IMG/VR virus record: IMGVR_UViG_3300027816_000052
Span: 62,001-126,000 of that record
Direction: 5' to 3' (one strand)
DNA length: 64,000 nt
Part shown: positions 29,024-55,539 of the stretch, one piece after another
Layout of the letters: every line of letters starts with the position of its first letter
Position numbering within the stretch: the first letter of the stretch is position 1
Translations under genes and position numbers: made by a program
The notes under the pieces: generated by a model
The model's input: only the letters and a program-made list of their open reading frames with translations
Told to the model about the DNA's origin: nothing
Database searches by the model: none

Positions 29024-29138
29024 CTTTATCTATAAGATATAGTAATAATTTATTGTTTTTATAAATTATAATCAAAATTTTTGATTAGTTCAAGTTTTTT
29101 ATAATTTATTTTTTTAAACCAATAGAATATTTATAATT

Positions 29139-29900
29139 ATGAAAAAGATAAAATTAACAGAATCAGATTTATATAGAATTGTTAGAAAGGTTCTTCTTGA
29201 GCAAGAGGAAGAAAAGAGAAGTTTTACATTTTCTCCGGGAACATTTGCGTCTTTTATAACATCATCATCAGGTGAAAGATTTGTTAAACATCTTAATAAC
29301 AAATATGATGAGGTTATTATTAATGGTGATTTGGATTTAGATGGAACACCAATTCAATCCTTACCTGATAATCTTCATGTTGGTGGGGATTTGAATTTAT
29401 ATGGAACACCAATTCAATCCTTACCGGATAATCTTTATGTTGGGAGAAATTTGGATTTAAGAGGAACACCAATTCAATCCTTACCGGATAATCTTTATGT
29501 TGGGAGAAATTTGGATTTACAAGGAACACCAATTCAATACTTACCGGATAATCTTCATGTTGGGGGAAGTTTGTGGTTAAATGGAACACCAATTCAATAC
29601 TTACCGGATAATCTTCATGTTGAGGGAAGTTTGGATTTAAGAGGAACACCAATTCAATCCTTACCGGATAATCTTTATGTTGGGGGATATTTGAATTTAC
29701 ATGAAACACAAATTCAATCCTTACCGGATAATCTTTATGTTGGGGGATATTTGAATTTACATGAAACACAAATTCAATCCTTACCGGATAATCTTTATGT
29801 TGGGGGGACAATTTATATTAATGGAATACCTTTAAATGATAATGATAAGTTGGTTGCAAAATATAAAGAAAAATATAGAATTGATAGAGCACTTATTTAA
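29139..29900 (+). CDS. LRR-like repeat protein (8 x 20 aa) with head-leader motif
   Basis: Leader MKKIKLTESDLYRIVRKVLLEQ; repeats LxVGGxLxLxGTPIQSLPDN. Confidence 0.85.
   Translation: MKKIKLTESDLYRIVRKVLLEQEEEKRSFTFSPGTFASFITSSSGERFVKHLNNKYDEVIINGDLDLDGTPIQSLPDNLHVGGDLNLYGTPIQSLPDNLYVGRNLDLRGTPIQSLPDNLYVGRNLDLQGTPIQYLPDNLHVGGSLWLNGTPIQYLPDNLHVEGSLDLRGTPIQSLPDNLYVGGYLNLHETQIQSLPDNLYVGGYLNLHETQIQSLPDNLYVGGTIYINGIPLNDNDKLVAKYKEKYRIDRALI
29320..29810 (+). repeat. 60-nt tandem repeat array, 8 units
   Basis: Successive 60-nt lines align in register (ggaacaccaattcaatccttaccggataatctt...). Confidence 0.95.
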
Positions 29901-30480
29901 CCTTCTTAGCCTTTGTAATTTTACCCTCAAAAATTGTTTTACCAACTTTGAACTGGATAGTTTCATTTACTTTTGATGTATTTTCAATCAATAACCCATT
30001 TTCCTCTAAAAGTTCTTCAAATACTTCGCGCATCATTGACTTTAATTCATTTTTATTCGGTAATGATGTAATTTGTTTTGATTGAACATTAGACGGAGTT
30101 TCTTGTCGTTTTGTACCCATCAATCTGCTAGCTTTCTCAACTAATTCATCAGATAGTGCTGTTGTTGGTGGTTGCGGTTGCTGAATGGGGTGTTCAATCA
30201 TTAATTTCTTAATTTCATCTGGAAGTCTTGAATTTAAAATTCTATCCTTAACAGGAACCGCTGAATTAATTGGTTTTGGTTTTACTTGCTGTTCTGAAAG
30301 ATATTCCTGTGGGATATTATATTTAACATCGGGAACTTCAAAATCGTCAACCTGAGGTCTTTCTACATTTATTCTAGTATTTTCACTTATTCCTATATCA
30401 CTAGTCTGACCTCTAGGAATTTTATTGTGTTTATCCATTATTTTTTTGGATATCATTAGTTTTTCAATAAGTGCGTCCAT
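29893..30480 (-). CDS. hypothetical protein
   Basis: 195-aa ORF, ILNSRLPDEIKKLMIEHPI. Confidence 0.65.
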   Translation of the reverse strand: MDALIEKLMISKKIMDKHNKIPRGQTSDIGISENTRINVERPQVDDFEVPDVKYNIPQEYLSEQQVKPKPINSAVPVKDRILNSRLPDEIKKLMIEHPIQQPQPPTTALSDELVEKASRLMGTKRQETPSNVQSKQITSLPNKNELKSMMREVFEELLEENGLLIENTSKVNETIQFKVGKTIFEGKITKAKKVK

Positions 30481-30485
30481 AGTTT

Positions 30486-31289
30486 TTAGAATTTAGCATT
30501 AATAATAAGACGATTCATGGATTTGTCACCAGTTCTGTTATAATTTGGTCTAACTTCATTAAATTTTTCATCGGTAGGGATGTAAGTCATGATTTTATCA
30601 ACCCTAAATAAACGCCAACCCGGAAGTGGTTGTGTACCCAAAAAATCTGTGTGTGATGCACCCAAAAAGTCCCAAGCTCTTAATACTTGATTACCAGCTT
30701 TTGAGTAACCAAAAGCAACAGGTTCAATTTCTCTATTACCTTTACCTCCGGGTTCATCACCATCATAATACATGACCGTAATTCGTTTATTTTTTATCGA
30801 ATCCATAATCGAATCAATTTTATTTCCAGTTTTTGGAACATCAGTTGGTATTTCTGGTTCATATTCGTCTGGTCTAAAATTCTTGATTATAAGTTTAATC
30901 GCATCATCGGTATAACCAGCAGATTTTAAATCACCAACTAAATCTTCAGATGGTTCATATTTTCTTTTGAATGTTGTTGTATTAATTAATTCTTTTGCAA
31001 CAGCATCCATAAGATTTTTATCCATACCCGTATTTTTAAGTATGGATGCGGTAATTTTACCAAACTCTTGAACAGTAATTCGCCCTTCTTTTATTGCGTC
31101 AATAAGTTCTTGACCTGTTTTAGCGACAACTGGATTACCTTCAGAATCTACGTAGGTAATACGTTTAAATCTTGAAACAGAATCTAATGCATTTTTGACA
31201 ATATCATCGCTAACCCCCGCAAAAACATCTTCTCTTGCAGGAATTAATTGTTCAATAATTAAACCGGTTAGCGATTCAAGTAATCTCAT
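30486..31289 (-). CDS. WYL-like domain protein with short leader
   Basis: C-terminus YY.G...G.REIEPVAFG...LRAW...WRLFRVDKI; N-terminus MRLLESLTGLIIEQ. Confidence 0.65.
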   Translation of the reverse strand: MRLLESLTGLIIEQLIPAREDVFAGVSDDIVKNALDSVSRFKRITYVDSEGNPVVAKTGQELIDAIKEGRITVQEFGKITASILKNTGMDKNLMDAVAKELINTTTFKRKYEPSEDLVGDLKSAGYTDDAIKLIIKNFRPDEYEPEIPTDVPKTGNKIDSIMDSIKNKRITVMYYDGDEPGGKGNREIEPVAFGYSKAGNQVLRAWDFLGASHTDFLGTQPLPGWRLFRVDKIMTYIPTDEKFNEVRPNYNRTGDKSMNRLIINAKF

Positions 31290-32878: not shown

Positions 32879-32946
32879 TTTTCTTTTTAATTAATAAATA
32901 TCATTCACTTTATATTTATCTATAAATACAAGAAAAAACACTAAAT

Positions 32947-35055: not shown

Positions 35056-35059
35056 TCAC

Positions 35060-37792
35060 ATGGAAAAAAAACTAAATATTTTAGCACACGCCTCTTTTAT
35101 TGGTAAAACCGGTTATGCTAATCATGCTAAATCATTTTTTTGCGCGTTAAATAAGTATGCTAATGTTAAAGTTAGAAATCTGACAGTAGGTGATAGTTGG
35201 TGTGGATTATCGGAAAAACCTCATGATAAAGAAGAGTATTTTACCGATGAAATGCGTAATATGCTTATACTGCAAACATTATACGAACAAGATAATACAA
35301 GAAAAGATTATCCAATATACGGTTACGATGGGTCTTTCATTCCTGATATTCATATCGTTTTAAATGATGTTAATAACCCATATTTTTATGATAACTATGA
35401 TGGATATCGCATAGCTTATAATGTTTGGGAATCAACGGAATACCCAAAAGATTTTTTTGAAAGATTATTTTATTTTCATGAGGTTTGGGTACCATCTAAA
35501 TGGCAAAAAGATAATTTAATTAAACAAGGTTACCCAAAGGAAAGAATTTCGGTTGTTCCAGAAGGTGTTGACCCTGAAGTTTTTAAACCAACAAATGAAA
35601 TTGATTTATCAGAAAAGTTTACATTTTTACTTTTTGGTAGGTGGGAATATAGAAAATCAACAAGTGAAATAATTAGAGCGTTTAATGAAGAATTTAAAAA
35701 TGAGGATGTTAACTTAGTTGTTTGTGCAAATAATCCATTTGCTAATGATGGGTTTAAAACAACTGAAGAAAGAATAATTGCAAATGGTTTGGAAAATAAA
35801 AATCTTAAAATAGTTAATTTTCCAACTAGAGAAGAATATATTAATTATTTAAAAAATGGTCATGTTTTTATTTCATGTGCTAGAAGTGAGGGGTGGAATC
35901 TACCTTTAATAGAAGCAATGGCTTGTGGTACGCCATCAATTTATTCAAACTGGGGAGCACAACTTGAATTTGCTGATGGATTAGGAATTCCTGTTAAAGT
36001 TACTGATTTTGTTTCAGCTAAAAACCAAGATAATTCATTTGTTGGCGATTATATAGAACCAGATTTTAACGATTTGAAATTAAAAATGAGAATGGTCTAT
36101 AATGATTATAAATCATTTAAAGAAAATGCTTTATTAGAATCTGAAACAATTCACAGAAATTTTAATTGGGATTTGGTGGCTAAAAATGCTAATAATATTT
36201 TACAAAAAAAGGTAAATGACTTTGTTTTTGTTACTACCGGTAACGAAAATTATATGCCTCTTATTGAATGTTTAGTTAAGTCTTTAAATGAGTTTTCAAA
36301 ATTTAAAATTATTGTTTATGGGATAAATTGTGATGTACCATTTGATTATCCAAATTTAATAAAAAGAAGATTAAATATTGAAGAATACTCAGAACATGAT
36401 AGGTGGTTTTGGAAGCAATACGCATGTATTGAGTCAATTAACGAATCATTTGAAAATTTTGTTTGGGTTGATGGGGACGTTGTTGCAAATTTTAATATTG
36501 ATAATATAATCAATTATTTCCCTTATGTTGGGAATTATCCGCTATCTGACATACACAGACAAAAAGAATTCTATGGATTTTTTTATGAAAATGGTGTTAA
36601 ATATGAGCAACTATTTAATGAAAATCTTAGTAAATACTTAAATGTTACACCACATTTACCATTTATGCACGTTTGTCTTTTCATTTACAATAAAACCTGC
36701 AAATGGTTTTTTGATGAGATTATAAACCTCTATAAATCAACAGATTTAAATAAATATAGGCATTTATTCTTATGGAATGATGAAGGTGCTGATAATGCAA
36801 TTAGATCGAAGTTTAATTTAAAAAACCATTTACCGTTATCTAATTTTGATGTTTCATCATATGATGGCGAATCATATGAGTTTATTAATAACCAACTATC
36901 TGATTTTTATACATTTTGGGAGAAAGATGGTCCATATAATTTTAATAAAATTTATGGACTTCAATATATTCCTGAAAATAAAAAAGATATTATCTACTTC
37001 CACGGTAACAAAAATGTTGACGCAGCAAATAAAATGATTGATTTTATTAAAATAAAAAGAGACAATTCTTTTTACGAATCAAATAATTTTTATACTTCAA
37101 AAAATGTAATAACAGATTTTAGTGATATAAAAAATATTGAGGGCGGAACTATTTGGGTTGCTGAAAATTACGGTTGGTCACACGCAATATATCATGAAAT
37201 TTATAACTTACAGGATTACTATTTAAGTAGAAAAAAACAAATAAATGATGGGGATATTGTTGTTGATTTAGGAGGTAATATTGGTATCTTCAATAGATGG
37301 GCTTATTCACAAGGAGCGTCTAAAGTTATCTCATTTGAACCAGATAGAAGATATTTTGAATTATTGAAGAAAAACACAAGTCCTAATTCAATTCTTTTTA
37401 ATGCGGCGATGTCTGATAGGATTGGGGAGTTGAGTCTATTTGAGAGCGACCATTTGGGTGGTTCAAATATATTTGGTGTGCCTAGTAACACAAAAAATTA
37501 CAAGGTCCGGACTTATACATTAGATTTTTTATTTGATACAGATTTAATTACTCACATTGACTTTTTAAAGGTTGACGTTGAGGGTGCAGAACATCTAATT
37601 TTTAAAGGAATTAGCGATAACAATTTATCTAAAGTTAAAACTATTTCAATGGAATATCATCACTCACATTTTAATTTTGATGAAAAATTACGTGATGATT
37701 TTATTAATAGATTTGTTAGTCTTGGCTTCAATTCTTATCTTTTATTTATGGGGACAAATAATGCATTACAAATGATATATTTTTATAGATAA
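35060..37792 (+). CDS. GT4 glycosyltransferase + GT-A domain + FkbM methyltransferase fusion
   Basis: TGYA.H..., WES, GRWEYRK, SEGWNLPLIEAMACGTP; middle WVDGD, YFHG; C-terminus DLGGNIG..FEP..LKVDVEGAE. Confidence 0.88.
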   Translation: MEKKLNILAHASFIGKTGYANHAKSFFCALNKYANVKVRNLTVGDSWCGLSEKPHDKEEYFTDEMRNMLILQTLYEQDNTRKDYPIYGYDGSFIPDIHIVLNDVNNPYFYDNYDGYRIAYNVWESTEYPKDFFERLFYFHEVWVPSKWQKDNLIKQGYPKERISVVPEGVDPEVFKPTNEIDLSEKFTFLLFGRWEYRKSTSEIIRAFNEEFKNEDVNLVVCANNPFANDGFKTTEERIIANGLENKNLKIVNFPTREEYINYLKNGHVFISCARSEGWNLPLIEAMACGTPSIYSNWGAQLEFADGLGIPVKVTDFVSAKNQDNSFVGDYIEPDFNDLKLKMRMVYNDYKSFKENALLESETIHRNFNWDLVAKNANNILQKKVNDFVFVTTGNENYMPLIECLVKSLNEFSKFKIIVYGINCDVPFDYPNLIKRRLNIEEYSEHDRWFWKQYACIESINESFENFVWVDGDVVANFNIDNIINYFPYVGNYPLSDIHRQKEFYGFFYENGVKYEQLFNENLSKYLNVTPHLPFMHVCLFIYNKTCKWFFDEIINLYKSTDLNKYRHLFLWNDEGADNAIRSKFNLKNHLPLSNFDVSSYDGESYEFINNQLSDFYTFWEKDGPYNFNKIYGLQYIPENKKDIIYFHGNKNVDAANKMIDFIKIKRDNSFYESNNFYTSKNVITDFSDIKNIEGGTIWVAENYGWSHAIYHEIYNLQDYYLSRKKQINDGDIVVDLGGNIGIFNRWAYSQGASKVISFEPDRRYFELLKKNTSPNSILFNAAMSDRIGELSLFESDHLGGSNIFGVPSNTKNYKVRTYTLDFLFDTDLITHIDFLKVDVEGAEHLIFKGISDNNLSKVKTISMEYHHSHFNFDEKLRDDFINRFVSLGFNSYLLFMGTNNALQMIYFYR

Positions 37793-40527
37793 TGGCGCAC
37801 GTAGAACAAAGAAATTTTTGCATTAAAGTAAAAGAAAAGTTTCCTGATTTTTTTAAAAATAAAAAAGTCTTGGATATTGGTTCATTAGACATAAATGGTA
37901 GTAATCGAGATTTATTTGAGGATTGTGATTATATAGGATTAGACGTTGGTGAAGGTAGGAATGTCGATGTGGTATCTGTTGGTCATTTATATGATGCTCC
38001 AGATAGTTTTTTCGATACGATTATTTCTACTGAAGTCTTTGAACACGATATGTTCTATGAGGAAACCGTTAAAAACATAATGAGAATGTTAAAACCCGGT
38101 GGCTTATTTGTATTTACCTGTGCCGCACCGGGAAGACCGGAGCATGGAACTAGACGATGTGGTGAAGAGTGCGCTCCATTATTGATACAAATTTCAGAAG
38201 AATGGGCTGACTATTATAAAAATTTAGATAGCCATGATTTTAAAATTATACCAAGTTTTAATGAAACATTTCCCGATGGTTATTTTGAATTAAATAATTT
38301 ATATCTAGAAATACCATCTGATTTGTATTTTTATGGTATAAAAGGTGGTGAGAAATATTACATAAATAATATTGTTACAGAATACAATAAACCAGAATTT
38401 AATGAACATATTTTTGTTATTGATTCTTGGCCTGACGATGAAAAAAAAGAAAATGATTTAGTTAATTTAATTAAAAAATTAAAATCATTTAATATTCAAA
38501 TTTTACTAGCCGGACATTATCCGATTAAAGAAGAAATACAAAAAATGGTGGATTATTATATTTTTGATAAAAATAATCCATTATTACTTTCTAGTGAATT
38601 TAATTCGTTTGATGTTGGTAGTGGAAGATGGGCAGAAACTTCAGAATATAGAATAGATATGTCAATGGTCTTTCATCATGATTATGCAATATGGGAAACA
38701 ATGAGAACGGCATTTAATTTTTGTAAATTTTTAAATAAAAAATACATTCATTTCTTAGAATATGATAATAATCCAAATGTTTTCCAATATAAACAATGTT
38801 TTATTGAACAAATAATTAATCATGATGCAATCATATACGAATATAGTTTAGATTCAGCAAAAAATTTAAATCCATATTGTGCCACTTTTATTTTTTCAAT
38901 AAAAACAGATATCGCATTAAAATTAATTTCACAAATAAATTCAAAAACGGAATATTTTACTAACAAACCTAAAGGTTGGCAGTTAGAGCGAGTTTTTTTA
39001 GAAAAATTAACTAATGTTACAAATAACATAAAACTTTCAGAATATATTGCAAATGAAAATGAATTAAATACTCAAGCAGTTTGGAATAGAGATGGTATAG
39101 TTAAAAATGGTGCAATATTTCAATCCTACTTAGCTGTTGATTATAAAAATCATTTATATTTAGAACTAATATCTGGTTTTGATAGTAAAAAAGCTGATAA
39201 AGATTATATTATAGAGATTGAGTATCTTTCAACAAGAAAGTTTATAACATTAAAAAAAGATAACATGATGATTGTTCCGTTAGGGGAATATCACGTTGGA
39301 GGTTATGTTAAATTATATTATGAGGGGGTTTTAATTTTTAATGAATTTCTATATAAATCAGCAAAAAAATTTAGAGAAGTGAGTTCAATTATTTTAAAAA
39401 ATGAGTCACTACCTGAACCCAAAATTAATATTAATTTTATTGATGGGGCGTTTGTTGAAATATTAGATGATATTGATTCTAAATATGATGTTGAATTTAT
39501 AGATAAGCAAACAAATCGTGTAATTTTTGGAACAACAATAAAAAATAATTGTTGGGCTAAATGTAATAAAAAATATTTTATTGATTGGAAAATCAAAATT
39601 AAATCACAATACGGTAAAGAATATACATATGACTTAGATTTAAAAAATCAAAATGTTTTGATTTCATTTGAGTCTAAATCCTTAGGGGATACTTTAGCGT
39701 GGATGTCATATGTTGAGGCTTTCGGTATCAAACACGGATGTAATGTTATCTGCTCAACATTCCACAATGATTTATTTGTAAACCAATATAAAAATATTAA
39801 ATTCGTTAAACCGGGAAATACAGCTAGTAATATAATTGCTCTTTATAGATTAGGTGTTTTTTATAATGGAAATAATTTTAATGAGGAATATCATTTAATG
39901 GACCCAAAAAAGGAACCACTATTAAAAATAGCTTCCGACATATTGGGATTAGAATATAAAGAATTAAAACCAAGTCTTCCCGTTTTATCAATAAAAAAAG
40001 AAAAACGAGTTTGTATAGCAACACATTCAACCGCACAATGCAAGTATTGGAATAACCCAACTGGTTGGCAAGAAGTTGTTGATTTCTTGATAGAAAATGG
40101 ATATGAAGTTAGATTGTTGTCAATTGAAGAAGATGGATATATGGGTAATAAAAATCCTATCGGTGTTACACAACAACCAAAAGGTGAAATAACAGATGTC
40201 CTTAAAACATTACAGGAATCGGAATTTTTTATTGGTATTAGTAGCGGACTAAGCTGGTTAGCTTGGGCATCTGGAATTAAAACAATACTAATATCCGGTT
40301 TTACTGATAAATATTTAGAACCATTAAATGATATTTATCGGGTAATAAATAAAGAAGTATGTCATGGGTGTTGGCACACACATAAATTTGACGCTGGCGA
40401 CTGGAATTGGTGTCCAATACACAAAGGAACATCTAGAGAATTTGAATGCTCTAAATCAATAACCGCAGACCAAGTTATTAATTTAATTAAAAATGAAAAT
40501 TTATGTTCAAATTGCGTCATATCGTGA
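37792..40527 (+). CDS. methyltransferase + Aah/TibC-type (BAHT) protein O-heptosyltransferase fusion
   Basis: N-terminus VLDIGSLDING..TEVFEHD; C-terminus KYFIDW...SLGDTLAW...STAQCKYWNNPTGW...FIGISSGLSWLAW...LISGF...CHGCW...WCP.HKGT.R.FECSK (iron-finger Cys). Confidence 0.85.
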   Translation: MAHVEQRNFCIKVKEKFPDFFKNKKVLDIGSLDINGSNRDLFEDCDYIGLDVGEGRNVDVVSVGHLYDAPDSFFDTIISTEVFEHDMFYEETVKNIMRMLKPGGLFVFTCAAPGRPEHGTRRCGEECAPLLIQISEEWADYYKNLDSHDFKIIPSFNETFPDGYFELNNLYLEIPSDLYFYGIKGGEKYYINNIVTEYNKPEFNEHIFVIDSWPDDEKKENDLVNLIKKLKSFNIQILLAGHYPIKEEIQKMVDYYIFDKNNPLLLSSEFNSFDVGSGRWAETSEYRIDMSMVFHHDYAIWETMRTAFNFCKFLNKKYIHFLEYDNNPNVFQYKQCFIEQIINHDAIIYEYSLDSAKNLNPYCATFIFSIKTDIALKLISQINSKTEYFTNKPKGWQLERVFLEKLTNVTNNIKLSEYIANENELNTQAVWNRDGIVKNGAIFQSYLAVDYKNHLYLELISGFDSKKADKDYIIEIEYLSTRKFITLKKDNMMIVPLGEYHVGGYVKLYYEGVLIFNEFLYKSAKKFREVSSIILKNESLPEPKININFIDGAFVEILDDIDSKYDVEFIDKQTNRVIFGTTIKNNCWAKCNKKYFIDWKIKIKSQYGKEYTYDLDLKNQNVLISFESKSLGDTLAWMSYVEAFGIKHGCNVICSTFHNDLFVNQYKNIKFVKPGNTASNIIALYRLGVFYNGNNFNEEYHLMDPKKEPLLKIASDILGLEYKELKPSLPVLSIKKEKRVCIATHSTAQCKYWNNPTGWQEVVDFLIENGYEVRLLSIEEDGYMGNKNPIGVTQQPKGEITDVLKTLQESEFFIGISSGLSWLAWASGIKTILISGFTDKYLEPLNDIYRVINKEVCHGCWHTHKFDAGDWNWCPIHKGTSREFECSKSITADQVINLIKNENLCSNCVIS

Positions 40528-41740
40528 CCCGCAATTAATTCCGACAATTAAAAATTTATTAGAAAATTCAAAAAATCCAGAAAATTTAAGGATTGGTATT
40601 GCTAGACAATATCATCCAGAAGATAAATTTGATGATTTGTCTGAGTATGATAACGATGAACGATTTAGAATTTTAAATATTCCATATGAAGAATCTTTAG
40701 GTGTTTGTTGGGCTAGACATTTGATTCAACAACTTTATGATAATGAGGAATATACCCTTCAGATAGATTCTCACATGAGATTTGAAAAAGATTGGGATGA
40801 AACATTAATTAATATGCTTGAAGGATTAAAAAAAGATGGTTATAGAAAGCCACTATTAACAGCATATGTACCATCATTTAATCCTGAAAATGACCCTAAT
40901 GATAGAGTCAAGGTTCCTTGGCGGATGGTTTTTGATAAGTTTACACCAGAAGGTGTTGTATTTTTTCTTCCTGAGGTTATCCAAAATTGGAAACAATTAG
41001 ATAAACCAATTCCTGCTAGATTTTACTCTGCACATTTTTGTTTTACAATTGGACAATTTGCGTTAGAGGCGCAACATGACCCCGAATATTATTTTCATGG
41101 TGAAGAGATTTCTATCGCAGCAAGAGCATATACACATGGATATGATTTATTTCATCCGCATAAGGTCATTCTTTGGCATGAATATACTAGAAAGGGTAGA
41201 ACAAAGCATTGGGACGATATACAAAATTGGTCAGCTTTAAACAAAGAATCACACAGAAGAAATAGAGTATTATTTGGTATGGATAATGAAATTCAAAACA
41301 TTGATTTTGGTAGATTTGGTTTTGGTAAATTAAGAACTTTAAGAGATTATGAAAAATATGTTGGTTTATTATTTGAAAAACGTGCTATACAGCAATACAC
41401 GTTAGATAAAAAATATGCACCAAATCCATATACATTTAATGATGAAAATGAGTGGAAAAATAGTTTTGCATCAAAGTTTAAATATGATATAAAAGTTCCA
41501 AAAATTAATTTACAAGAAAAAGATTATGAGTTTTTTGCTATTGCTTTTCACGACAAAAAAGATGAAACGTTATACAGAAAAGATGCAGACAAGATTGAAA
41601 TTTTTAATTCTTTTAAGACAGTTGATGACTTTATAACAATTAGGAGAGAATTTAATAATGAACAAATTCCGGCGTATTGGGTTGTTTGGCCTTATAGTAA
41701 AACAAAAGGATGGTGCGATAGATTGGTAGGTGAAATTTAA
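40493..41740 (+). CDS. Skp1-type (GT60/Gnt1-like) protein GlcNAc transferase
   Basis: IYVQIASYRD, G.CWAR...Q......LQIDSHMRF..DWD, F.GEEI..AARAYT.GYD, WHEY. Confidence 0.85.
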   Translation: MKIYVQIASYRDPQLIPTIKNLLENSKNPENLRIGIARQYHPEDKFDDLSEYDNDERFRILNIPYEESLGVCWARHLIQQLYDNEEYTLQIDSHMRFEKDWDETLINMLEGLKKDGYRKPLLTAYVPSFNPENDPNDRVKVPWRMVFDKFTPEGVVFFLPEVIQNWKQLDKPIPARFYSAHFCFTIGQFALEAQHDPEYYFHGEEISIAARAYTHGYDLFHPHKVILWHEYTRKGRTKHWDDIQNWSALNKESHRRNRVLFGMDNEIQNIDFGRFGFGKLRTLRDYEKYVGLLFEKRAIQQYTLDKKYAPNPYTFNDENEWKNSFASKFKYDIKVPKINLQEKDYEFFAIAFHDKKDETLYRKDADKIEIFNSFKTVDDFITIRREFNNEQIPAYWVVWPYSKTKGWCDRLVGEI

Positions 41741-42662: not shown

Positions 42663-43931
42663 ATGGCTAATAAAAAAATTAGTAACTTACCTGAGTATAA
42701 CACACCACAACCAAATGATGTGTTACCAATTGTTAATGTTGCTAATAGCGTAACACAAAAAGTACTATTTTCAGCAATTAGTCAAACAATAACATCAGGA
42801 TTAGTTGATGTTTTTGTGACTGGTGGTACTTATTCAGCTGGAACAGCAACATTTATAAATAATACTGGCGGAACGTTTAGTGTTAGTGGCTTTACCGATA
42901 GTCAAGCAGGTTCCTCAGGAACATCAGGGACAAGTGGCTCATCTGGCTCTAGCGGAACATCAGGGATAAGCGGCTCTTCAGGAAGTTCTGGAACATCTGG
43001 TACAAGTGGTTCATCAGGAAGTTCTGGTACAAGTGGTTCATCTGGTAGTTCAGGAACATCTGGAACAAGTGGTTCATCAGGAAGTTCTGGTACAAGTGGT
43101 TCGTCAGGTTCTTCAGGAACAAGTGGTTCATCTGGTAGTTCAGGAACATCTGGAACAAGTGGTTCATCAGGAAGTTCTGGTACAAGTGGTTCGTCAGGAA
43201 GTTCTGGTACAAGTGGTTCGTCAGGTTCTTCAGGAACAAGTGGTTCATCAGGAAGTTCTGGTTCTTCAGGTACAAGTGGAATAAATGGTTCTTCTGGAAC
43301 ATCAGGAACAAGTGGTTCATCTGGTAGTTCAGGAACATCTGGAACAAGTGGTTCATCAGGAAGTTCTGGTACAAGTGGTTCATCAGGAAATTCTGGTTCT
43401 TCAGGAACAAGTGGTTCATCTGGTAGTTCAGGAACATCAGGAACAAGTGGTTCATCAGGAAGTTCTGGCACAAGTGGTTCGTCAGGTTCTTCAGGAACAA
43501 GTGGTTCATCTGGTAGTTCAGGAACATCTGGAACAAGTGGTTCATCAGGAAGTTCTGGTACAAGTGGTTCGTCAGGTTCTTCTGGTACAAGTGGTTCATC
43601 AGGAAGTTCTGGTTCTTCAGGTACAAGTGGAATAAATGGTTCTTCTGGAACATCTGGTACAAGTGGTTCTTCAGGAAGTTCTGGTACAAGTGGTTCATCA
43701 GGTTCTAGCGGAACATCTGGCACAAGTGGTTCTTCAGGAAGTTCAAGTGTTACTAATTTTCCGGTAACTTTTAATAATTCTGGAAGTGGAAATGCATCTG
43801 GGGTTAATTTTGATGGTTCTGTTGCACGAACTGTTAGTTTTAATACAATAGGTGCAAATAAAGTAATAACCTCTGGTACCGCTGCTCCGACCGGAGGTAA
43901 TGATGGAGACATCTATTTACAATTTACATAA
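42663..43931 (+). CDS. fibre protein with a long Gly-Ser-Ser/Gly-Thr-Ser repeat
   Basis: MANKKISNLP N-terminus; ~280 aa of G-X-X repeats; C-terminus SGTAAPTGGNDGDIYLQ. Confidence 0.75.
   Translation: MANKKISNLPEYNTPQPNDVLPIVNVANSVTQKVLFSAISQTITSGLVDVFVTGGTYSAGTATFINNTGGTFSVSGFTDSQAGSSGTSGTSGSSGSSGTSGISGSSGSSGTSGTSGSSGSSGTSGSSGSSGTSGTSGSSGSSGTSGSSGSSGTSGSSGSSGTSGTSGSSGSSGTSGSSGSSGTSGSSGSSGTSGSSGSSGSSGTSGINGSSGTSGTSGSSGSSGTSGTSGSSGSSGTSGSSGNSGSSGTSGSSGSSGTSGTSGSSGSSGTSGSSGSSGTSGSSGSSGTSGTSGSSGSSGTSGSSGSSGTSGSSGSSGSSGTSGINGSSGTSGTSGSSGSSGTSGSSGSSGTSGTSGSSGSSSVTNFPVTFNNSGSGNASGVNFDGSVARTVSFNTIGANKVITSGTAAPTGGNDGDIYLQFT
42908..43746 (+). repeat. 9-nt (GSS/GTS) tandem repeat with higher-order duplication
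   Basis: ggt tca tca / gga aca agt units; the rare GIN unit recurs 351 nt apart (43271, 43622). Confidence 0.9.
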
Positions 43932-49841: not shown

Positions 49842-49852
49842 ATTAAAATATA

Positions 49853-50968: not shown

Positions 50969-51009
50969 CTTAATTGGTATTTCTACCAATAAATATCATA
51001 ATAAAAGAA

Positions 51010-52545
51010 TTAATCTAAAATAAATAATAAGTCCTTATCTTTAAAGATACAAACGCCCTCATCAATTATTGTGTTAGCGTTTGAAAATACATATGTTTTT
51101 TTGTTTTTTTCAAAAATTAACCAATCGGTTTTGTATTTTTTTATTGAAGATGACGGTACTATTTTAATGGTATTATTTTCGGTTACAATTTCTTTAGCTG
51201 GTTTTATTTGCGCATTTGCCACCAATCCATTAAGCTTAACTTGCACATCAATTCCTCCGCGCATATCATCACTATTACCGTAACCAGAAATTTTTGCAAC
51301 ATTGTTTTCACCAAATCGTTTAATTAAAGCATCCACCACTAAATTTTCAATCGAATCCCCCTTTTTTGTTGTCTCTGAAAGAGCGGTAATTAATTTTTTA
51401 AATGTTTTGGACTCCTTACTAAAAATTCTATACTTAAATAAATCAATATGTTCCATTAAAGTGGAAATCTGTTTTTTTAATTCTTCCTTATTTTGAGAAT
51501 TATTAAGGAAATCAATAGAATCTTTACCATTGATTTCTAAGACTTTATTAATGTCTTCAGTCAAAATCTTTAATCCTAAAATGTTTGTGTTTAATTTATT
51601 AAGGACAGACCATCCCTTTTTCTCAACATCATAAACACCGTGTATATCATTTATTATTCTAAAATTTTCATTAAAAACTTCAGAGAGAACATTACCAATG
51701 AAAACTTTATAACCTTCAAATAATTCCTTATTTTTTTTATAAACTTCTAAGTAACTTCCGAAGTTTTCTCTACCATAAGATTCTTCTAATATTTCAGAAC
51801 TATTATTCATACTCTCTTTAATATTTTCATTTTGTTGATTTTCTAGTCGTTCATTAATATATTCCCAATTAACGACTCTCCAGAAATTTTCAATATACTT
51901 ATCTTTCTGGTTTCTATAAGTAAGATAGTAAGCATGTTCCCATAAATCAAGTCCTAATAGGGGAAAACCGCCATTATCAACAATACCCATCAACGGGTTG
52001 TCTTGATTAGGTGTGTTCATTATTTTTAATGTACCTCTTTTTGTTAAAACCAACCAAACCCATCCGGAACCAAAACGTTCTTTTGCGGAAGCTTCAAATT
52101 TTTTTCTAAATTCTTTTATTCCACCAAAATTTTTTTGAATTATTTTAAGAATTGGACCGCTAGCTTCTTGTTGTTTTGGAGATAACATCTTCCAAAAAAT
52201 TGCATGATTATATGCTCCACCGGCATTATTTCTAATATCGGTGTTATATTGACTAATTGTTTTGACAATATGTTCTAAATCATCCTCTTTTTTTCCGCTT
52301 TTTGTTAAAGCATCATTTAATTTATTAACATAACCAATATAATGTTTGTTATAATGGTAACTCATAGTTTCCGGGTCAATAAATTTTTTTAGCGAGTCAA
52401 ACTTATACGGTAACTTTTCAATTGGAATTTTACCTTTTACGTTTTTAACCTTTTTTTCTTCTCGAAGGTAACCCTTTTTCATTTCTACTCTGTAGATTTC
52501 TTCCTCCAATCTGTCAATTCTATTAATTAAATTTTTCATGACCAA
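51010..52545 (-). CDS. Mn/Fe superoxide dismutase fused to a PD-(D/E)XK nuclease-like domain
   Basis: LPY..L...ID.ETM.YHY.KH..YV, NAGG.YNH..FW, FGSGWVWL, NQD, DLWEHAYY; C-terminus G...E...DDMRGGIDV.......QIKP. Confidence 0.85.
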   Translation of the reverse strand: MVMKNLINRIDRLEEEIYRVEMKKGYLREEKKVKNVKGKIPIEKLPYKFDSLKKFIDPETMSYHYNKHYIGYVNKLNDALTKSGKKEDDLEHIVKTISQYNTDIRNNAGGAYNHAIFWKMLSPKQQEASGPILKIIQKNFGGIKEFRKKFEASAKERFGSGWVWLVLTKRGTLKIMNTPNQDNPLMGIVDNGGFPLLGLDLWEHAYYLTYRNQKDKYIENFWRVVNWEYINERLENQQNENIKESMNNSSEILEESYGRENFGSYLEVYKKNKELFEGYKVFIGNVLSEVFNENFRIINDIHGVYDVEKKGWSVLNKLNTNILGLKILTEDINKVLEINGKDSIDFLNNSQNKEELKKQISTLMEHIDLFKYRIFSKESKTFKKLITALSETTKKGDSIENLVVDALIKRFGENNVAKISGYGNSDDMRGGIDVQVKLNGLVANAQIKPAKEIVTENNTIKIVPSSSIKKYKTDWLIFEKNKKTYVFSNANTIIDEGVCIFKDKDLLFILD

Positions 52546-52595
52546 AATAATTGTTACCTTTATTATGTGAAAGTCAACAATTATAAATAGTTTGA

Positions 52596-54371
52596 TTATC
52601 TAGAATTATTAATGAAAGAAAGAATTTCTTCAACTGAATCAACTTCATTCATTCCATCTCCCATAACAGTTCTCACTATTTGCTTTTTTCTATTTAGAAT
52701 ATCATAAATTTTACCTTCAATTGTATTTTCAAAAATTGGATAGTATACCAAAACTTTATTTTTCTGACCAAATCTATACGCCCTATCTTCTGCTTGAGCA
52801 TGATCTGCTGGGACAAAGGATAAATCGTTCATTACAACAACTTCCGCTGATGTTAACGTTAGTCCCACACCAGCAGCAATAATCTGTCCAACAAAAATCA
52901 TTGTTTTTTCATCGTTTTGAAACTTATCAACAGACTCTTGTTTTTGTTTCGAATTCATACTACCATCTAACTTAACCGCTTTATCACCAAAATGCTCATA
53001 AATTTTATTTAATGGTTCAATAAAGTTGGTAAATATTATTATTTTTTTTCCTTGTTCAAGGATATCTTCACAAAAATCAATTGTTGACTGTATTTTTTCC
53101 AATGAAATTAATTTTCTAACTTTCATTAATTTTGTAAACTGTACGGTCAAAGACGATGATTCTTCTTTTTTATTATCATACCAATCATAATATTCACCCA
53201 TAAAATTTTCATATTCTTTAGATTTTAATCTAAGATAGATTGGTGTAATAATTTTTTCAGGTAAATCTAAAATATCTTCTTTATGTCTACGTAAAATGTA
53301 TTTTGAAGTCCTTTCTCTTAATTCATCTAAATTACTAGCGCCACTAACATTCCATATTTTTCTTTTTCCGGCTTTAAATTGGAATCCATTACAGTATCGT
53401 TTAACATATGCCATCCAATTATTTGCAACAGGACAATCTATCAATTTTAATAAATTAAAATAATTAATCGGTCTAGACGTAATTGGGGTACCGGAAAGCA
53501 ACCAAATTTTTTTTATTTTACCTGAAATAGCTAAAATAATTTTAGTTCGTATTGTTTGTGAATTTGCAATTTTATGCGCTTCATCAATAATACATAAATC
53601 AAAATTTGAAATTATTAATTCGGAATTTTCAGGATTATCCGAATCATAGAAATTCTTTAGAATATCATAATTTATTATTGTATACGTGACATCATCTTCA
53701 ATCCAAATTTTACCATCAATTATTGCCACTTTATCATTAGTATATAATTCAATCTCTCGTTTCCAATTTATTTTTAATGATGCTGGACAAATTATTAAAA
53801 TTTTTTTTGCTTTAGACTCTAATGAAGCAATTATTGCTGATGTCGTTTTTCCAACACCCATCGAATCTGCTAAAATAAATTTATCATTCTTTAATAACGT
53901 CTCAATTGCAATTTTTTGGTGCTCTAACGGTGGACGATGTGCATATTTTTCATAATCAACTTCAACCTTTACGTTACTTGTTTTTAAAATCGCTACTTTA
54001 GGTAACCAAATATCTGTAAGCTCTTCATTTTCAAAAAATTTACCCCAAATATGATAAGATGTATCTTTTTCAACCAAAAGTTTTTCAACATATATTTTTT
54101 CAGGAATTTGAATATACGCTTTATCATTTGCAAATTTTTTTGCAAAATATATATCCAAATCAACCCATTTTTTTGCAACTTTTGGAACAATAGTTTCATA
54201 AGTAATAATATAATCTGCTTGAGTTCTGGTTGGATAAAATTTTTTATTTTTAAGGTATTTTTCCTTTAATTTTAAAATAAAATTATTCACCCCACGATAT
54301 TCATCAAGGATTTTTAACGCTTTTTGTTCTGGTATGTTGTTTATATCAATCAAACAAGTAATAATAATCAA
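52596..54371 (-). CDS. SNF2-family (HARP-like) helicase/ATPase
   Basis: LADSMGVGKT, CPAS, DEAH, LSGTP, GVGLTL, QAEDRAYRFGQ. Confidence 0.92.
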   Translation of the reverse strand: MIIITCLIDINNIPEQKALKILDEYRGVNNFILKLKEKYLKNKKFYPTRTQADYIITYETIVPKVAKKWVDLDIYFAKKFANDKAYIQIPEKIYVEKLLVEKDTSYHIWGKFFENEELTDIWLPKVAILKTSNVKVEVDYEKYAHRPPLEHQKIAIETLLKNDKFILADSMGVGKTTSAIIASLESKAKKILIICPASLKINWKREIELYTNDKVAIIDGKIWIEDDVTYTIINYDILKNFYDSDNPENSELIISNFDLCIIDEAHKIANSQTIRTKIILAISGKIKKIWLLSGTPITSRPINYFNLLKLIDCPVANNWMAYVKRYCNGFQFKAGKRKIWNVSGASNLDELRERTSKYILRRHKEDILDLPEKIITPIYLRLKSKEYENFMGEYYDWYDNKKEESSSLTVQFTKLMKVRKLISLEKIQSTIDFCEDILEQGKKIIIFTNFIEPLNKIYEHFGDKAVKLDGSMNSKQKQESVDKFQNDEKTMIFVGQIIAAGVGLTLTSAEVVVMNDLSFVPADHAQAEDRAYRFGQKNKVLVYYPIFENTIEGKIYDILNRKKQIVRTVMGDGMNEVDSVEEILSFINNSR

Positions 54372-54420
54372 TTAAAAATAATTAATCAATATTTTTTAAA
54401 TCAATAGAATATTTATAATT

Positions 54421-55539
54421 ATGAAAAAGATAAAATTAACAGAATCAGATTTATATAGGATAATTAAACAAGTTCTTTTTGAACAGGAGGAAGAAAAGAG
54501 AAGTTTTACATTTTCTCCGGGAGCATTTGCATCTTTTATAACATCATCATCAGGTGAAAGATTTGTTAAACATCTTAATAACAAATATGATGAGATTGTT
54601 GTTAATGGGGGTTTGGATTTACAAGGAACACCAATTCAATCCTTACCGGATAATCTTAAAGTTGGGGGATGGTTGGATTTACGAGGAACACCAATTCAAT
54701 CCTTACCGGATAATCTTCATGTTGGGGGAAATTTGGAGTTAGATGAAACACAAATTCAATCCTTACCGGATAATCTTTATGTTGGGGGAAATTTGGAGTT
54801 AGATGGAATACCAATTCAATACTTAGGGAATAATATTCATGTTAAGGGAAATTTGGAGTTAGATGGAATACCAATTCAATACTTAGGGAATAATATTCAT
54901 GTTGGGGGAAATTTGTATTTATATGGAACACAAATTCAATCCTTAGGGGATAATCTTCATGTTGGGGGAAATTTGGATTTATATGGAACACCAATTCAAT
55001 CCTTACCGGATAATCTTCGTGTTGGGGGATGGTTGGATTTAAAAAGAGCACCAATTCAATCCTTACCGGATAATCTTCATGTTGGGGGAGATTTGTTTTT
55101 AAGTAAAACACCAATTCAATCCTTACCGAATAATCTTCATGTTGGGGGAAGTTTGTATTTACAAGGAACACCAATTCAATCCTTACCGGATAATCTTTAT
55201 GTTGGGAGAAATTTGGATTTAAGAGGAACACCAATTCAATCCTTACCGGATAATCTTCGTGTTGGGGGAGATTTGTGGTTAAATGGAACACCAATTAAAT
55301 CCTTAGGGGATAATCTTTATGTTGGGGGAAGTTTGTGGTTAAATGGAACACCAATTCAATACTTACCGGATAATCTTCATGTTGAGGGAAGTTTGGATTT
55401 AAGAGGAACACCAATTCAATCCTTACCGGATAATCTTCATGTTCCAAAAATTATTTTAATTAAAACCACGCCATTAAGTGATAATTATGAATTGGTTCAG
55501 ACATATAGTGAAAAATATAAAATTAATAGTACTTTTTAA
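54421..55539 (+). CDS. LRR-like repeat protein (14 x 20 aa) with head-leader motif
   Basis: Near-identical leader/N-cap to 29139; repeats LxVGGxLxLxGTPIQSLPDN. Confidence 0.85.
   Translation: MKKIKLTESDLYRIIKQVLFEQEEEKRSFTFSPGAFASFITSSSGERFVKHLNNKYDEIVVNGGLDLQGTPIQSLPDNLKVGGWLDLRGTPIQSLPDNLHVGGNLELDETQIQSLPDNLYVGGNLELDGIPIQYLGNNIHVKGNLELDGIPIQYLGNNIHVGGNLYLYGTQIQSLGDNLHVGGNLDLYGTPIQSLPDNLRVGGWLDLKRAPIQSLPDNLHVGGDLFLSKTPIQSLPNNLHVGGSLYLQGTPIQSLPDNLYVGRNLDLRGTPIQSLPDNLRVGGDLWLNGTPIKSLGDNLYVGGSLWLNGTPIQYLPDNLHVEGSLDLRGTPIQSLPDNLHVPKIILIKTTPLSDNYELVQTYSEKYKINSTF
54601..55440 (+). repeat. 60-nt tandem repeat array, 14 units
   Basis: Lines 54601-55381 align in register. Confidence 0.95.

What the first reader, a model, noticed from the sequence alone, without database searches (positions are those of the whole stretch)
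29109..55539. Dispersed hypervariable LRR-like gene family built from exchangeable 60-nt modules (VLR-like system in a phage)
Seen: two genes 25 kb apart (29139..29900, 8 units; 54421..55539, 14 units) share ~30 nt of upstream DNA (tttttaaa(c/t)caatagaatatttataatt) and a near-identical ~60-aa leader/N-cap, then diverge in module number and order and in the C-cap. Across the 22 units the framework codons (TTG, TTA, ATT, CAA, CCG, GAT, AAT, CTT, GTT, GGA) are almost free of synonymous change. The codons in xLxLxx vary heavily and non-synonymously (D/N/S/Y/W/G; D/N/W/E/Y/F; D/Y/R/Q/N/H/K/S). Exact multi-module blocks are shared between the loci: 29559-29675 = 55321-55437 (117 nt) and 29403-29495 = 55165-55257 (93 nt). 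Established: these positions form the concave ligand-binding beta-sheet of LRR solenoids, and lamprey VLRs diversify by module copying. Inference: the phage shuffles or gene-converts LRR cassettes to generate a repertoire of binders, possibly virion-delivered inhibitors of variable host defence proteins.
Basis: partly seen in the sequence, partly recalled or inferred. Interest (0 to 1): 0.92.

Follow-up and report, generated by a model that had tools for sequence, protein, structure and literature searches.

The report
Phage LRR binder family, shuffled modules
An uncultivated giant phage carries at least eleven scattered copies of a leucine-rich-repeat gene built from almost identical 60-base modules that differ only at three or four exposed codons and have been swapped between copies. 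This looks like an evolving repertoire of binding proteins, not a programmed lamprey-style diversity generator.

Summary
Gene A (29139..29900, 8 modules) and gene B (54421..55539, 14 modules) exist as described, and the 93-nt and 119-nt exact shared blocks are there. A third, diverged copy lies at 2664..3134. The parent 256-kb contig holds at least 11 paralogues.

Across modules, non-synonymous diversity at codons 1, 3, 5 and 17 is 0.46, against synonymous diversity of 0.036 in the framework codons. An AlphaFold model (pLDDT 90.7) is an LRR solenoid. Its closest solved relative is Vibrio FlrP. By sequence pattern, the variable residues face outward on the beta strands.

Modules behave as whole units. 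There are 33 distinct variable triplets where about 53 are expected, and they recur in different paralogues in different orders. Leaders are up to 99% identical where C-caps are only 70% identical, which shows exchange between paralogues.

Nothing supports a programmed VLR-like or DGR-like mechanism. Every copy is a complete gene, the window has no orphan cassettes, and array A is identical in four of five independent assemblies. The few strain differences found do lie in the family genes.

Function is inferred: binding proteins, probably made early inside the cell, since three prophage homologues sit in early operons. A 22-residue N-terminal helix shared with thousands of unrelated phage proteins hints at a targeting tag. 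This is a new variant of a known kind.

The parts
29109..29138 (+). Upstream stretch shared by A and B (TTTTTAAA(C/T)CAATAGAATATTTATAATT). All paralogues share only the last ~12 nt (ATATTTAT(GG/AA)TT).
29139..29900 (+). Gene A, 253 aa: N-terminal tag, N-cap, 8 LRR modules, C-cap.
29139..29204 (+). 22-residue amphipathic tag of A (MKKIKLTESDLYRIVRKVLLEQ), shared with many unrelated phage proteins.
   Evidence: helix 8-21 with lower pLDDT
29205..29327 (+). N-cap of A (one strand and two helices in the model).
29328..29807 (+). Array A: 8 modules of 60 nt.
29808..29900 (+). C-cap of A (TIYINGIPLNDNDKLVAKYKEKYRIDRALI), only 71% identical to the C-cap of B.
54391..54420 (+). Upstream stretch of B, the counterpart of 29109-29138.
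54421..55539 (+). Gene B, 372 aa: tag, N-cap, 14 LRR modules, C-cap. The next gene starts 10 nt downstream (55549) and heads a + strand run that includes the tail sheath gene.
54610..55449 (+). Array B: 14 modules of 60 nt. It is a mosaic of blocks identical to A, g167 and g168.
55450..55539 (+). C-cap of B.
2664..3134 (+). Third, diverged family copy (tag, N-cap, 3 modules, C-cap). It is in frame with, and apparently fused to, the upstream ORF 1455/1533..3134.

Best explanation
A and B are two members of a recently expanded, dispersed family. There are three copies in the window and at least 11 in the 256-kb parent contig of an uncultivated jumbo myovirus-like phage.

Each protein has four parts: a 22-residue amphipathic N-terminal helix, an N-cap of about 40 residues, 3 to 14 tandem LRR modules of 20 or 21 residues (xLxLxGTPIQSLPDNLxVGG), and a C-cap. 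It is predicted to fold as an LRR beta-solenoid.

Shown: the copies exchange sequence with one another. Unequal crossing-over and gene conversion between paralogues are the inferred routes, made easy by the identical framework. This keeps the framework and leader nearly identical at the DNA level and re-orders whole modules.

Shown: diversity is kept or driven at three or four codons per module, namely 1, 3 and 5 on the xLxLx strand and 17 on the LxV strand.

Inferred: the products are a repertoire of specific binding proteins without a Sec signal. Most likely they are made as independent accessory genes and act inside the infected cell on variable targets, such as host or competitor proteins (counter-defence or host takeover). 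The shared N-terminal helix would be a common docking or targeting element.

Diversification happens over evolutionary time. It is not a programmed event in each infection.
For: Anatomy and codon pattern. pN at the variable codons is 0.46 against framework pS of 0.036 for A+B, and 0.49 against 0.08 for 59 modules from 7 paralogues.

Fold:
- AlphaFold2 model with pLDDT 90.7 and pTM 0.82, with short strands at module positions 2-3 and 16-18.
- Best Foldseek match is 8z5u_0 (35% identity, rmsd 1.5 A, TM 0.85 normalised to the target).
- phmmer E = 1.7e-34 to the same chain. This is Vibrio FlrP, described as a typical LRR beta-solenoid (PMC13626733).

Module behaviour:
- 33 distinct (1,3,5) triplets against 53 expected.
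- 38 identical triplets between genes against 5.5 expected.
- Only 2 adjacent module pairs are shared between genes.

Mosaicism:
- The B and g167 leaders are 99% identical while their C-caps are 70% identical.
- Exact blocks of at least 75 nt link B to A, g167, g168, g175 and g176. The block orders are non-collinear for g167 versus g176 and for g168 versus g174.

Recent, lineage-specific insertion: among 80 loci carrying the neighbour of A, only contigs of this same phage have an LRR gene. Among 80 loci carrying the neighbour of B, only this phage has one directly upstream; two others have a distant LRR match a few kb away.

Strain differences fall in or at the edge of the family genes. L165 versus L164 has 2 SNPs in 8,759 nt, both in the array and both non-synonymous.

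Variability at positions 1, 3 and 5 is a family-wide property, seen in 101 proteins and 721 modules.

Three homologues in temperate phages or prophages lie in early operons. These are Edno5 gp47, next to the repressor region and cIII/exo/RecT, a Methylocystis prophage, and a Flavobacterium prophage, where the gene follows RecT and a weak Apyc1-like hit.
Against: - No experiment and no annotated relative gives a function. PHROGs, NCBIfam and PADLOC are silent.
- B sits directly upstream of, and is co-oriented with, a + strand run that contains the tail sheath gene. A late or virion role is therefore not excluded.
- Because conversion homogenises the framework, the ratio pN(variable)/pS(framework) is not a clean dN/dS. 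It shows that diversity is maintained, but not necessarily that new mutations are positively selected.
Outward orientation of the variable residues rests on the strand assignment and the in/out alternation rule, not on measured accessibility.
- Several hybrid genes come from contigs that begin or end inside arrays (L001, L170, L171/L172). They could be short-read assembly chimeras.
Confidence: 0.6

Rival explanations
1. Programmed diversity generator, VLR-like cassette assembly or DGR-like targeted mutagenesis. The phage would rebuild or mutate the arrays at high frequency, so each population holds many variants.
For: The variable codons are extremely concentrated while the framework is identical. 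Modules recur in different orders. Contigs often break at the arrays.
Against: - All copies are complete genes, and the window has no orphan cassettes.
- Array A is identical in assemblies from four samples and differs by 2 SNPs in a fifth. B, g167, g176 and g194 are identical wherever they are covered.
- The invariant adenines in TTA, ACA, CCA, ATT, CAA, GAT and AAT, together with frequent TGG and GAG at variable codons, do not fit adenine mutagenesis.
- No reverse transcriptase or deaminase turned up among the roughly 40 window ORFs scanned. This scan was not exhaustive.
Confidence: 0.05
2. Virion-borne host-recognition or adhesion modules. The conserved N-terminal part would dock each paralogue on the tail, baseplate or capsid, and the variable LRR face would bind cell-surface glycans or proteins, giving a multi-receptor host range.
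For: - A conserved N-terminus with a variable distal part is the usual layout of receptor-binding proteins.
- B lies immediately upstream of, and co-oriented with, a + strand run that contains the sheath gene.
- The variable positions are rich in D, N, S, Y and W, which suits glycan binding.
- Two other tag-bearing proteins carry a peptidoglycan-binding domain.
Against: - Most paralogues sit among replication or nucleotide-metabolism genes, or stand as isolated single genes on the opposite strand to their neighbours.
- The prophage homologues are in early operons, not tail modules.
- There is no match to a tail-fibre or spike family.
- The tag also occurs inside proteins, and in thousands of small unrelated proteins.
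Confidence: 0.2
3. Artefact: the arrays and their shared blocks are products of short-read assembly of repeats.
For: Many contigs start or end inside family genes. Hybrids join the flanks of different paralogues (L001, L170, L171/L172). A 4-module duplication in g174 is absent from L173.
Against: - Array A with its flanks was assembled identically from several samples (L083, L085, L163, L278), and with 2 SNPs in L084/L165.
- The full B array is identical in L170.
- The ORFs stay open in frame through 8 to 14 modules, and the proteins fold with high confidence.
- Homologues exist in finished genomes and in an isolated phage.
Confidence: 0.04
4. No selection for diversity. The exposed residues of a recently amplified repeat are simply unconstrained, and the family is neutral baggage.
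For: Surface residues of solenoids tolerate change. Tandem repeats amplify readily.
Against: - Non-synonymous diversity at four codons is about 6 to 13 times the synonymous diversity of the framework, far above the neutral expectation of 1.
- The same positions vary in 101 homologues across phyla, with a biased residue set of S, Y, D, N, W and R.
- At least 11 intact paralogues are kept in one phage genome.
Confidence: 0.06

Closest known systems
Vibrio FlrP (PDB 8z5u chain 0; PMC13626733), an LRR protein bound to the rod of the polar flagellar motor
   Same: It has the same 20-residue LRR subtype (xLxLxxTxIxxLPxxLxVxG). phmmer gives E = 1.7e-34, with 35% identity and rmsd 1.5 A over 164 columns. 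It is the only solved member.
   Different: FlrP has a Sec signal and is a single-copy periplasmic structural part of a bacterial machine. The phage proteins have a charged N-terminal helix instead, occur as many paralogues, and have near-identical modules with hypervariable positions.
[quoted passage not shown] Edwardsiella phage Edno5 gp47, Methylocystis parvus P0025, Flavobacterium P0092)
   Same: They share the module consensus and the near-identical modules with variation at positions 1, 3, 5 and 17. They are carried by phages.
   Different: They are single genes with a different N-terminus and an extra C-terminal domain of about 150 aa. Their variable vocabulary is much smaller (S/Y, D/Y, E/R). 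They have neither the tag nor the multi-locus family.
Lamprey and hagfish variable lymphocyte receptors
   Same: They are LRR solenoids whose diversity lies on the concave beta-sheet and arises by copying LRR modules. PDB VLR and repebody chains are weak sequence hits.
   Different: VLRs are assembled somatically from hundreds of non-coding donor cassettes into an incomplete germline gene by deaminase-linked copy choice (established knowledge). Here all copies are complete genes, no donor cassettes are seen, and the arrays are stable between samples.
TAL effector repeats (Xanthomonas and Ralstonia)
   Same: The evolutionary pattern is the same: tandem repeats almost identical at the DNA level, variation confined to a few specificity codons, and paralogues that recombine and re-order repeats (established knowledge).
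   Different: TAL repeats are helical, 33-35 residues long, and read DNA bases. Here the fold is an LRR beta-solenoid, the proteins are mildly acidic (pI about 5), and the ligand is unknown.
T-even phage internal proteins (IPI and others) with a capsid targeting sequence
   Same: This is an analogy for the tag. The T-even internal proteins are a diverse set of proteins that share only a short conserved N-terminal sequence, and they are described as injected anti-restriction proteins (PMC3012670). The tag here has an invariant Glu at position 21, preceded by L, I, V or T at position 19. That resembles protease sites that cut after Glu, such as AXE in SPN3US (PMC7411985).
   Different: There is no sequence similarity. 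The tag here is 22 residues long and also occurs inside proteins. No protease or virion data are available.

Membership tests
Leucine-rich repeat (LRR) superfamily | Tandem repeats of 20-30 residues with an LxxLxLxx(N/T/C)xL-type core | tested here: met
   22 units of xLxLxGTPIQSLPDNLxVGG, with L2, L4, I9, L12, N15 and V18 invariant, and L16 and T7 nearly so.
Leucine-rich repeat (LRR) superfamily | Solenoid fold with one parallel beta strand per repeat, and similarity to solved LRRs | tested here: met
   AF2 model with pLDDT 90.7. Foldseek returns FlrP, IpaH, SspH1, VLR and repebody LRR domains. phmmer E = 1.7e-34 to FlrP. This rests on prediction, not a solved structure of this protein.
Leucine-rich repeat (LRR) superfamily | Pfam LRR model above its gathering score | tested here: not met
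   For A and B, LRR_14 scores 12.2 and 10.3 bits against a cut-off of 40. The bacterial homologue P0025 reaches LRR_4 at 31.1 against 27. Current models cover this subtype poorly.
VLR-type assembled antigen receptor system | Incomplete expressed gene plus arrays of partial, non-coding donor cassettes | tested here: not met
   Every copy is a complete ORF with a start codon and both caps. All module matches in the window fall inside the three genes.
VLR-type assembled antigen receptor system | Different assembled arrays in different individuals of one population | tested here: inconclusive
   Consensus arrays are identical or differ by 2 SNPs across samples. Minor variants cannot be seen without reads.
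VLR-type assembled antigen receptor system | AID/APOBEC-like cytidine deaminase | not tested
   Only about 40 window ORFs were scanned, with no such hit. The rest of the 256-kb genome was not examined.
Diversity-generating retroelement (DGR) | Template/variable repeat pair differing at adenines of the template | tested here: not met
   Framework adenines are invariant. The variable codons include TGG, GAG, AGA and GTA, and variation is spread over many modules in many genes.
Diversity-generating retroelement (DGR) | Reverse transcriptase gene nearby | tested here: inconclusive
   None was found among the ORFs scanned. The scan was not exhaustive.
TAL effector-like repeat proteins | Helical repeats of 33-35 residues with a two-residue specificity loop | tested here: not met
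   The repeats are 20 or 21 residues and beta-solenoid. Only the evolutionary pattern is alike.
Capsid-targeted internal (ejected) proteins | Short conserved N-terminal peptide shared by otherwise unrelated proteins | tested here: met
   The tag heads 37 distinct non-LRR sequences in viral contigs (three of them family fragments cut off by a contig end) and matches 3,525 protein clusters. It also occurs internally, which fits less well.
Capsid-targeted internal (ejected) proteins | Removal of the peptide by the prohead protease, and presence in virions | not testable with these tools
   Only a conserved motif with invariant Glu21 is seen. No proteomics is available, and no protease gene was identified in the window.
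FlrP flagellar rod protein | Sec signal peptide and flagellar role | tested here: not met
   The N-terminus is a charged amphipathic helix, and the genes are in a phage genome.

The most novel reading that the evidence does not exclude
The phage keeps a combinatorial library of LRR binders at eleven or more loci. Their modules are re-dealt by recombination between loci. The products would be directed by a common 22-residue tag into the capsid, or to another shared site, and delivered with the DNA to neutralise variable host defence proteins. This would be a phage counterpart of an adaptive binder repertoire working at the population level. The same tag would then mark a large, unrecognised class of delivered phage proteins, represented by 3,525 clusters.
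Probability: 0.12. Interest if true: 0.85.

Novelty: new variant of a known kind. Interest (0 to 1): 0.62.

Why it matters
Repeat proteins with a homogenised framework and a few hypervariable specificity codons are the natural binder scaffolds that biology and biotechnology use again and again. TAL effectors, VLRs, repebodies and DARPins are examples.

I found no paper describing a phage that maintains a multi-locus family of this kind. If the targets are host defence or surface molecules, the family would be a compact and readable record of a phage-host arms race. It would also be a source of small, well-folding LRR scaffolds with a natural variable vocabulary.

The shared N-terminal helix is a separate lead. 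It marks thousands of unannotated phage proteins and may define a common localisation or delivery route.

Tried and rejected
- DGR-type mutagenesis was rejected on the codon pattern.
- Sigma-70 promoter and intrinsic terminator scans around both genes gave no more sites than shuffles.
- The motif ATATTTAT(R)(R)TT before the ATG occurs four times in the window. Its role as a promoter or start context is unresolved.
- PHROGs, NCBIfam and PADLOC gave no informative family for A, B or the homologues. There were only sub-threshold LRR-level hits to type III effector models.
- The Pfam hit to pAdhesive_15 (26.4 bits for A, cut-off 23.8) is treated as a solenoid-repeat cross-match, not as a function.
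- No nucleotide match to any isolated phage was found. The DNA polymerase is only about 23% identical to any isolate's, so neither host nor taxon could be assigned.
- The first scan of bacterial genomes with protein A found nothing. A profile scan found the bacterial type in many phyla.
- A Pfam scan of 55 tag-bearing proteins gave only four single, scattered domain hits.
- Literature searches for phage LRR families found nothing relevant.
- The long antisense ORFs inside the arrays (29320..29811 and 54842..55294) are taken as by-products of a repeat that has no stop codon in that frame.
- The metagenome scan for more alleles of A returned only the parent contig and one other, and the array there is identical.
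- Model coordinates could not be read, so solvent accessibility was not computed.

Full report
**1. The observation**

Two + strand ORFs lie at 29139..29900 (253 aa) and 54421..55539 (372 aa). Tandem Repeats Finder reports 60-nt arrays at 29329-29806 (8.0 copies) and 54612-55443 (13.9 copies). In register, the proteins have a 63-residue leader and then 8 and 14 units of xLxLxGTPIQSLPDNLxVGG.

The codon table of the 22 units shows TTG, TTA, ATT, TTA, AAT and GTT invariant. CAA, CCG, GAT and CTT are nearly invariant. Outside codons 1, 3, 5 and 17, the only synonymous variants are one CCT, one GGT and two GGG. Codons 1, 3, 5 and 17 carry 6, 6, 8 and 4 different residues.

Upstream stretch plus leader are 202/219 identical.

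It is also incomplete. tblastn of A and B against the window finds a third copy at 2664..3134. It has the same leader, three diverged units and a related C-cap, and it is in frame with a long upstream ORF.

**2. More than chance**

Nei-Gojobori diversities over all unit pairs were computed.
- For A+B, pN at codons 1, 3, 5 and 17 is 0.46 and pS in the other 16 codons is 0.036, a ratio of about 13.
- For 59 units from seven paralogues of the same genome, the values are 0.49 and 0.08, a ratio of about 6.

In the collinear stretch A2-A6 versus B10-B14 (300 nt) there are 25 differences. None is a synonymous framework change, and 14 lie in codons 1, 3, 5 or 17.

**3. Genome context**

The window is GC-poor (about 29%). 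It encodes:
- a 1129-aa tail sheath;
- a collagen-like tail-fibre protein;
- a B-family DNA polymerase;
- an SNF2-type helicase;
- a terminase/PhoH-like ATPase;
- many glycosyl- and methyltransferases.

There is no nucleotide match to any isolated phage. The polymerase is only about 23% identical to the nearest isolates.

The window corresponds to positions 62001-126000 of a 256-kb IMG/VR contig. That contig carries further family members. I call them g167, g168, g174, g175, g176 and g194, after the loci that hold them. g175 is cut by the contig start. There is also a 159-aa copy in tandem after g175, and probably a 337-aa copy. Their arrays hold 3 to 14 units, and some units belong to a 21-residue type (xLxLxGCKNLKSLPDNLxVGG). 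With the three copies in the window, that makes at least 11 paralogues.

Among 80 related loci that carry the orthologue of A's neighbour, only contigs of this same phage have an LRR gene. Among 80 that carry the orthologue of B's neighbour, only this phage has one directly upstream; two others (L017, L028) have a distant LRR match a few kb away. The copies are therefore recent, lineage-specific insertions. Homology between paralogues starts only about 12 nt before the ATG.

**4. Fold**

An AlphaFold2 model of A, built with 14 relatives, has pLDDT 90.7 and pTM 0.82. It shows:
- an N-terminal helix (residues 8-21) with lower confidence;
- a small N-cap;
- a solenoid with short strands at unit positions 2-3 and 16-18;
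- a helical C-cap.

The best PDB match is chain 0 of 8z5u: 35% identity, rmsd 1.5 A, TM 0.85 on the target. After it come the LRR domains of IpaH, SspH1, SlrP and YopM, and the VLR-derived repebodies. By sequence the same chain scores E = 1.7e-34. It is FlrP, a 'typical LRR' beta-solenoid found on the rod of the Vibrio polar flagellar motor (PMC13626733).

With L2, L4, L16 and V18 in the core, side chains 1, 3, 5 and 17 must point outward from the two strands. This follows from strand alternation and is an inference; I could not read the coordinates. Pfam LRR models score A and B far below threshold. This LRR subtype is poorly covered by current models.

**5. Modules are exchanged as units**

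The 59 twenty-residue units show only 33 distinct (1,3,5) triplets. Shuffling the three positions independently gives 53.3 on average, with a minimum of 45 in 5000 shuffles. There are 38 identical triplets between different genes where 5.5 are expected.

Types such as SWN, NED, DWN, SYR, DSV, SYQ and YNH recur in several paralogues. Yet only two adjacent pairs of types are shared between genes, so the order is re-dealt.

Leaders and C-caps tell different histories. B and g167 have 99% identical leaders but 70% identical C-caps. C-caps range from 56 to 89% identity overall, while the array frameworks are nearly identical.

Exact blocks of at least 75 nt link B to several paralogues:
- g167 (leader to u1; u11-12 with g167 u7-8);
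- g168 (u3-5);
- A (u10-11 and u12-14).

Blocks between g167 and g176, and between g168 and g174, are in a different order in the two genes. B is thus a mosaic of pieces, each closest to a different paralogue.

This is the signature of exchange between paralogues and of unequal crossing-over. It also explains the missing synonymous changes: the framework is homogenised, or only recently spread, while diversity at a few codons persists.

**6. Is diversification programmed?**

I find no support for this.
- All module matches in the window lie inside the three genes, so there are no orphan cassettes.
- The pattern does not fit DGR mutagenesis. Framework adenines never vary, and TGG, GAG, AGA and GTA are common at the variable codons.
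- Independent assemblies of the same phage give the same arrays. A is identical in L083, L085/L163 and L278, and differs by two SNPs in L084/L165. The full B array is identical in L170, and its parts are identical in L181 and L182. g167, g176 and g194 are identical wherever they are covered.

The few strain differences do fall in the family genes. The clearest case is L165 versus L164, with 2 differences in 8,759 nt, both in array A and both non-synonymous: E>G at unit position 19 and R>S at position 5. If differences fell uniformly, the chance of this would be about 0.003.

Other differences sit at contig ends or at the edges of alignments, and I do not rely on them.

Several contigs join the flanks of different paralogues, or begin inside a family gene:
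- L001 carries g168/g174 and g167/g175 hybrids;
- L170 has gene B with a different upstream flank;
- L171/L172 have a g168-like 5' part joined to the B 3' part.

L173 lacks a 4-unit duplication that is present in g174.

These may be real recombinants, or chimeras and collapses from short-read assembly. I cannot tell which without reads.

**7. The wider family**

A word-indexed search finds 944 proteins. The closest have the same leader and come from metagenomes. Others are bacterial 'LRR domain-containing proteins' with the same unit and an extra C-terminal domain.

Over 101 proteins and 721 units, within-protein entropy is highest at positions 1 (1.64), 5 (1.58), 3 (1.29) and 6 (1.11), and lowest at the Leu/Ile/Pro core. 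The preferred residues are S, Y, D, N, W and R.

A profile scan of species-representative genomes finds the bacterial type in Bacteroidota, Clostridia, Alpha- and Gammaproteobacteria, Helicobacter, candidate phyla and others, at 40-80% identity. This patchy spread is typical of mobile genes.

Three contexts could be read, and all three are early regions of temperate phages.
- In Edwardsiella phage Edno5, gp47 lies between the repressor/regulator region and cIII, exonuclease VIII and RecT.
- In Methylocystis parvus, the gene follows an S24-type repressor and precedes ParB-like and SSB genes.
- In Flavobacterium sp., it follows an SMC-like ATPase, RecT and a metallo-beta-lactamase-fold gene with a weak Apyc1 (anti-Pycsar) hit.

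No defence-system model matches these proteins.

**8. The N-terminal helix**

The first 22 residues (MKKIKLTESDLYRIVRKVLLEQ) are not specific to this family. A degenerate DNA pattern finds them at the start of 37 distinct non-LRR sequences in viral contigs (three of these are family fragments cut off by a contig end). Two of the proteins carry a PG_binding_1 domain above the Pfam threshold.

A 30-column profile finds 3,525 clusters among 1.84 billion representatives. Nearly all matches are at residue 1, but some proteins carry two or three copies, including internal ones. The third copy in the window is also an internal case.

M1-E8, L11, I14 and E21 are invariant, and position 19 is L, I, V or T.

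By analogy with the T-even internal proteins, the helix could be a targeting or docking peptide. Those proteins share only a capsid targeting sequence and are described as injected defence-countering proteins (PMC3012670). Giant-phage head proteases also cut after Glu; the SPN3US motif is AXE (PMC7411985).

This is a lead, not a finding. Pfam on 55 tag-bearing proteins was almost empty.

**9. Most likely mechanism**

Shown:
- a real family of at least 11 members;
- a confidently predicted LRR solenoid, homologous to a solved LRR;
- exchange of modules between paralogues;
- diversity concentrated at exposed positions and far above synonymous divergence;
- arrays that are stable between samples.

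Inferred:
- the proteins are specific binders whose specificity is set by the string of (1,3,5,17) residues;
- new specificities arise by re-dealing modules between loci and by substitutions at those codons;
- the targets are variable, so diversity is selected;
- the proteins act inside the infected cell as accessory early or counter-defence factors, given the absence of a Sec signal, the isolated single-gene units, and the early-operon position of prophage homologues.

A virion-associated role, as receptor-binding proteins or as packaged proteins, remains a serious alternative. It applies especially to B, which heads a + strand run that contains the sheath gene.

**10. Verdict**

The system behaves like TAL-effector or multigene LRR families, with concerted evolution plus diversifying selection. 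It does not behave like the lamprey VLR assembly system or a DGR.

It is a new variant of a known kind, in a phage lineage with no cultured relative. The function is open and is worth an experiment.

Noticed in passing
window 2664..3134, within ORF 1455..3134: The third family copy is in frame with about 400 upstream codons that contain a basic Cys-rich motif. Other tag-bearing phage proteins end with a similar motif (KLCARGK..YPSAYANGYAVQVC). It looks like a fusion of two genes.
   Followed up: partly
window 29139-29204 and 54421-54486; loci L206-L274: A 22-residue helix (MKKIKLTExxLxxIVxRVIxE) heads many unrelated small phage proteins and matches 3,525 protein clusters. Some proteins carry 2-3 copies, and two carry a peptidoglycan-binding domain.
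   Followed up: partly
window 42663..43931 (+): A Gly/Ser/Thr-rich collagen-like tail-fibre ORF with nested repeats of 9, 27, 63 and 90 nt. It sits in the most GC-rich part of the window.
   Followed up: no
window 13310..14116, 24128..25627, 27774..28907, 35060..41740: An unusually dense set of glycosyltransferase and methyltransferase genes, including two ORFs of about 910 aa, one of which combines both activities.
   Followed up: no
window 51010..52545 (-): A 511-aa protein with complete Fe/Mn superoxide dismutase N- and C-terminal domains (E = 4e-21 and 1e-37) plus about 280 extra residues.
   Followed up: no
window 16609..18429 (-): A 606-aa protein that matches terminase-large-subunit-like and helicase-like ATPases in its first part and PhoH-like ATPases in its last 175 residues.
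   Followed up: no
window 12568-12579 (-), 26156-26167 (+), 29127-29138, 54409-54420: The motif ATATTTAT(R)(R)TT occurs four times where 0.7 are expected. Three of the four lie directly before an ATG start (A, B and ORF 12199..12567). TATTTATA-like motifs also precede tag-bearing genes in other contigs, sometimes after a terminator-like hairpin.
   Followed up: partly
window 29320..29811 (-) and 54842..55294 (-): Long antisense ORFs run through both arrays. They are most likely a by-product of a repeat unit that has no stop codon in that frame.
   Followed up: no
L001, L170, L171/L172, L173 versus the parent contig: Contigs from other samples join the flanks of different paralogues or lack a 4-module duplication. 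Many contigs end inside family genes. The family is a hotspot either for recombination or for misassembly.
   Followed up: partly
L276:6597-7334, next to the Flavobacterium homologue at 8001-9011: A metallo-beta-lactamase-fold gene with a weak Anti-Pycsar Apyc1 hit lies two small genes upstream of the prophage LRR gene.
   Followed up: no
window about 32648, versus L278: A 21-nt indel and one SNP (32379) are the only differences over 8.2 kb between the window and a contig from another sample.
   Followed up: no
window 115..1023 (+): An ORF that combines endonuclease VII-like and Mom-like DNA-modification matches.
   Followed up: no
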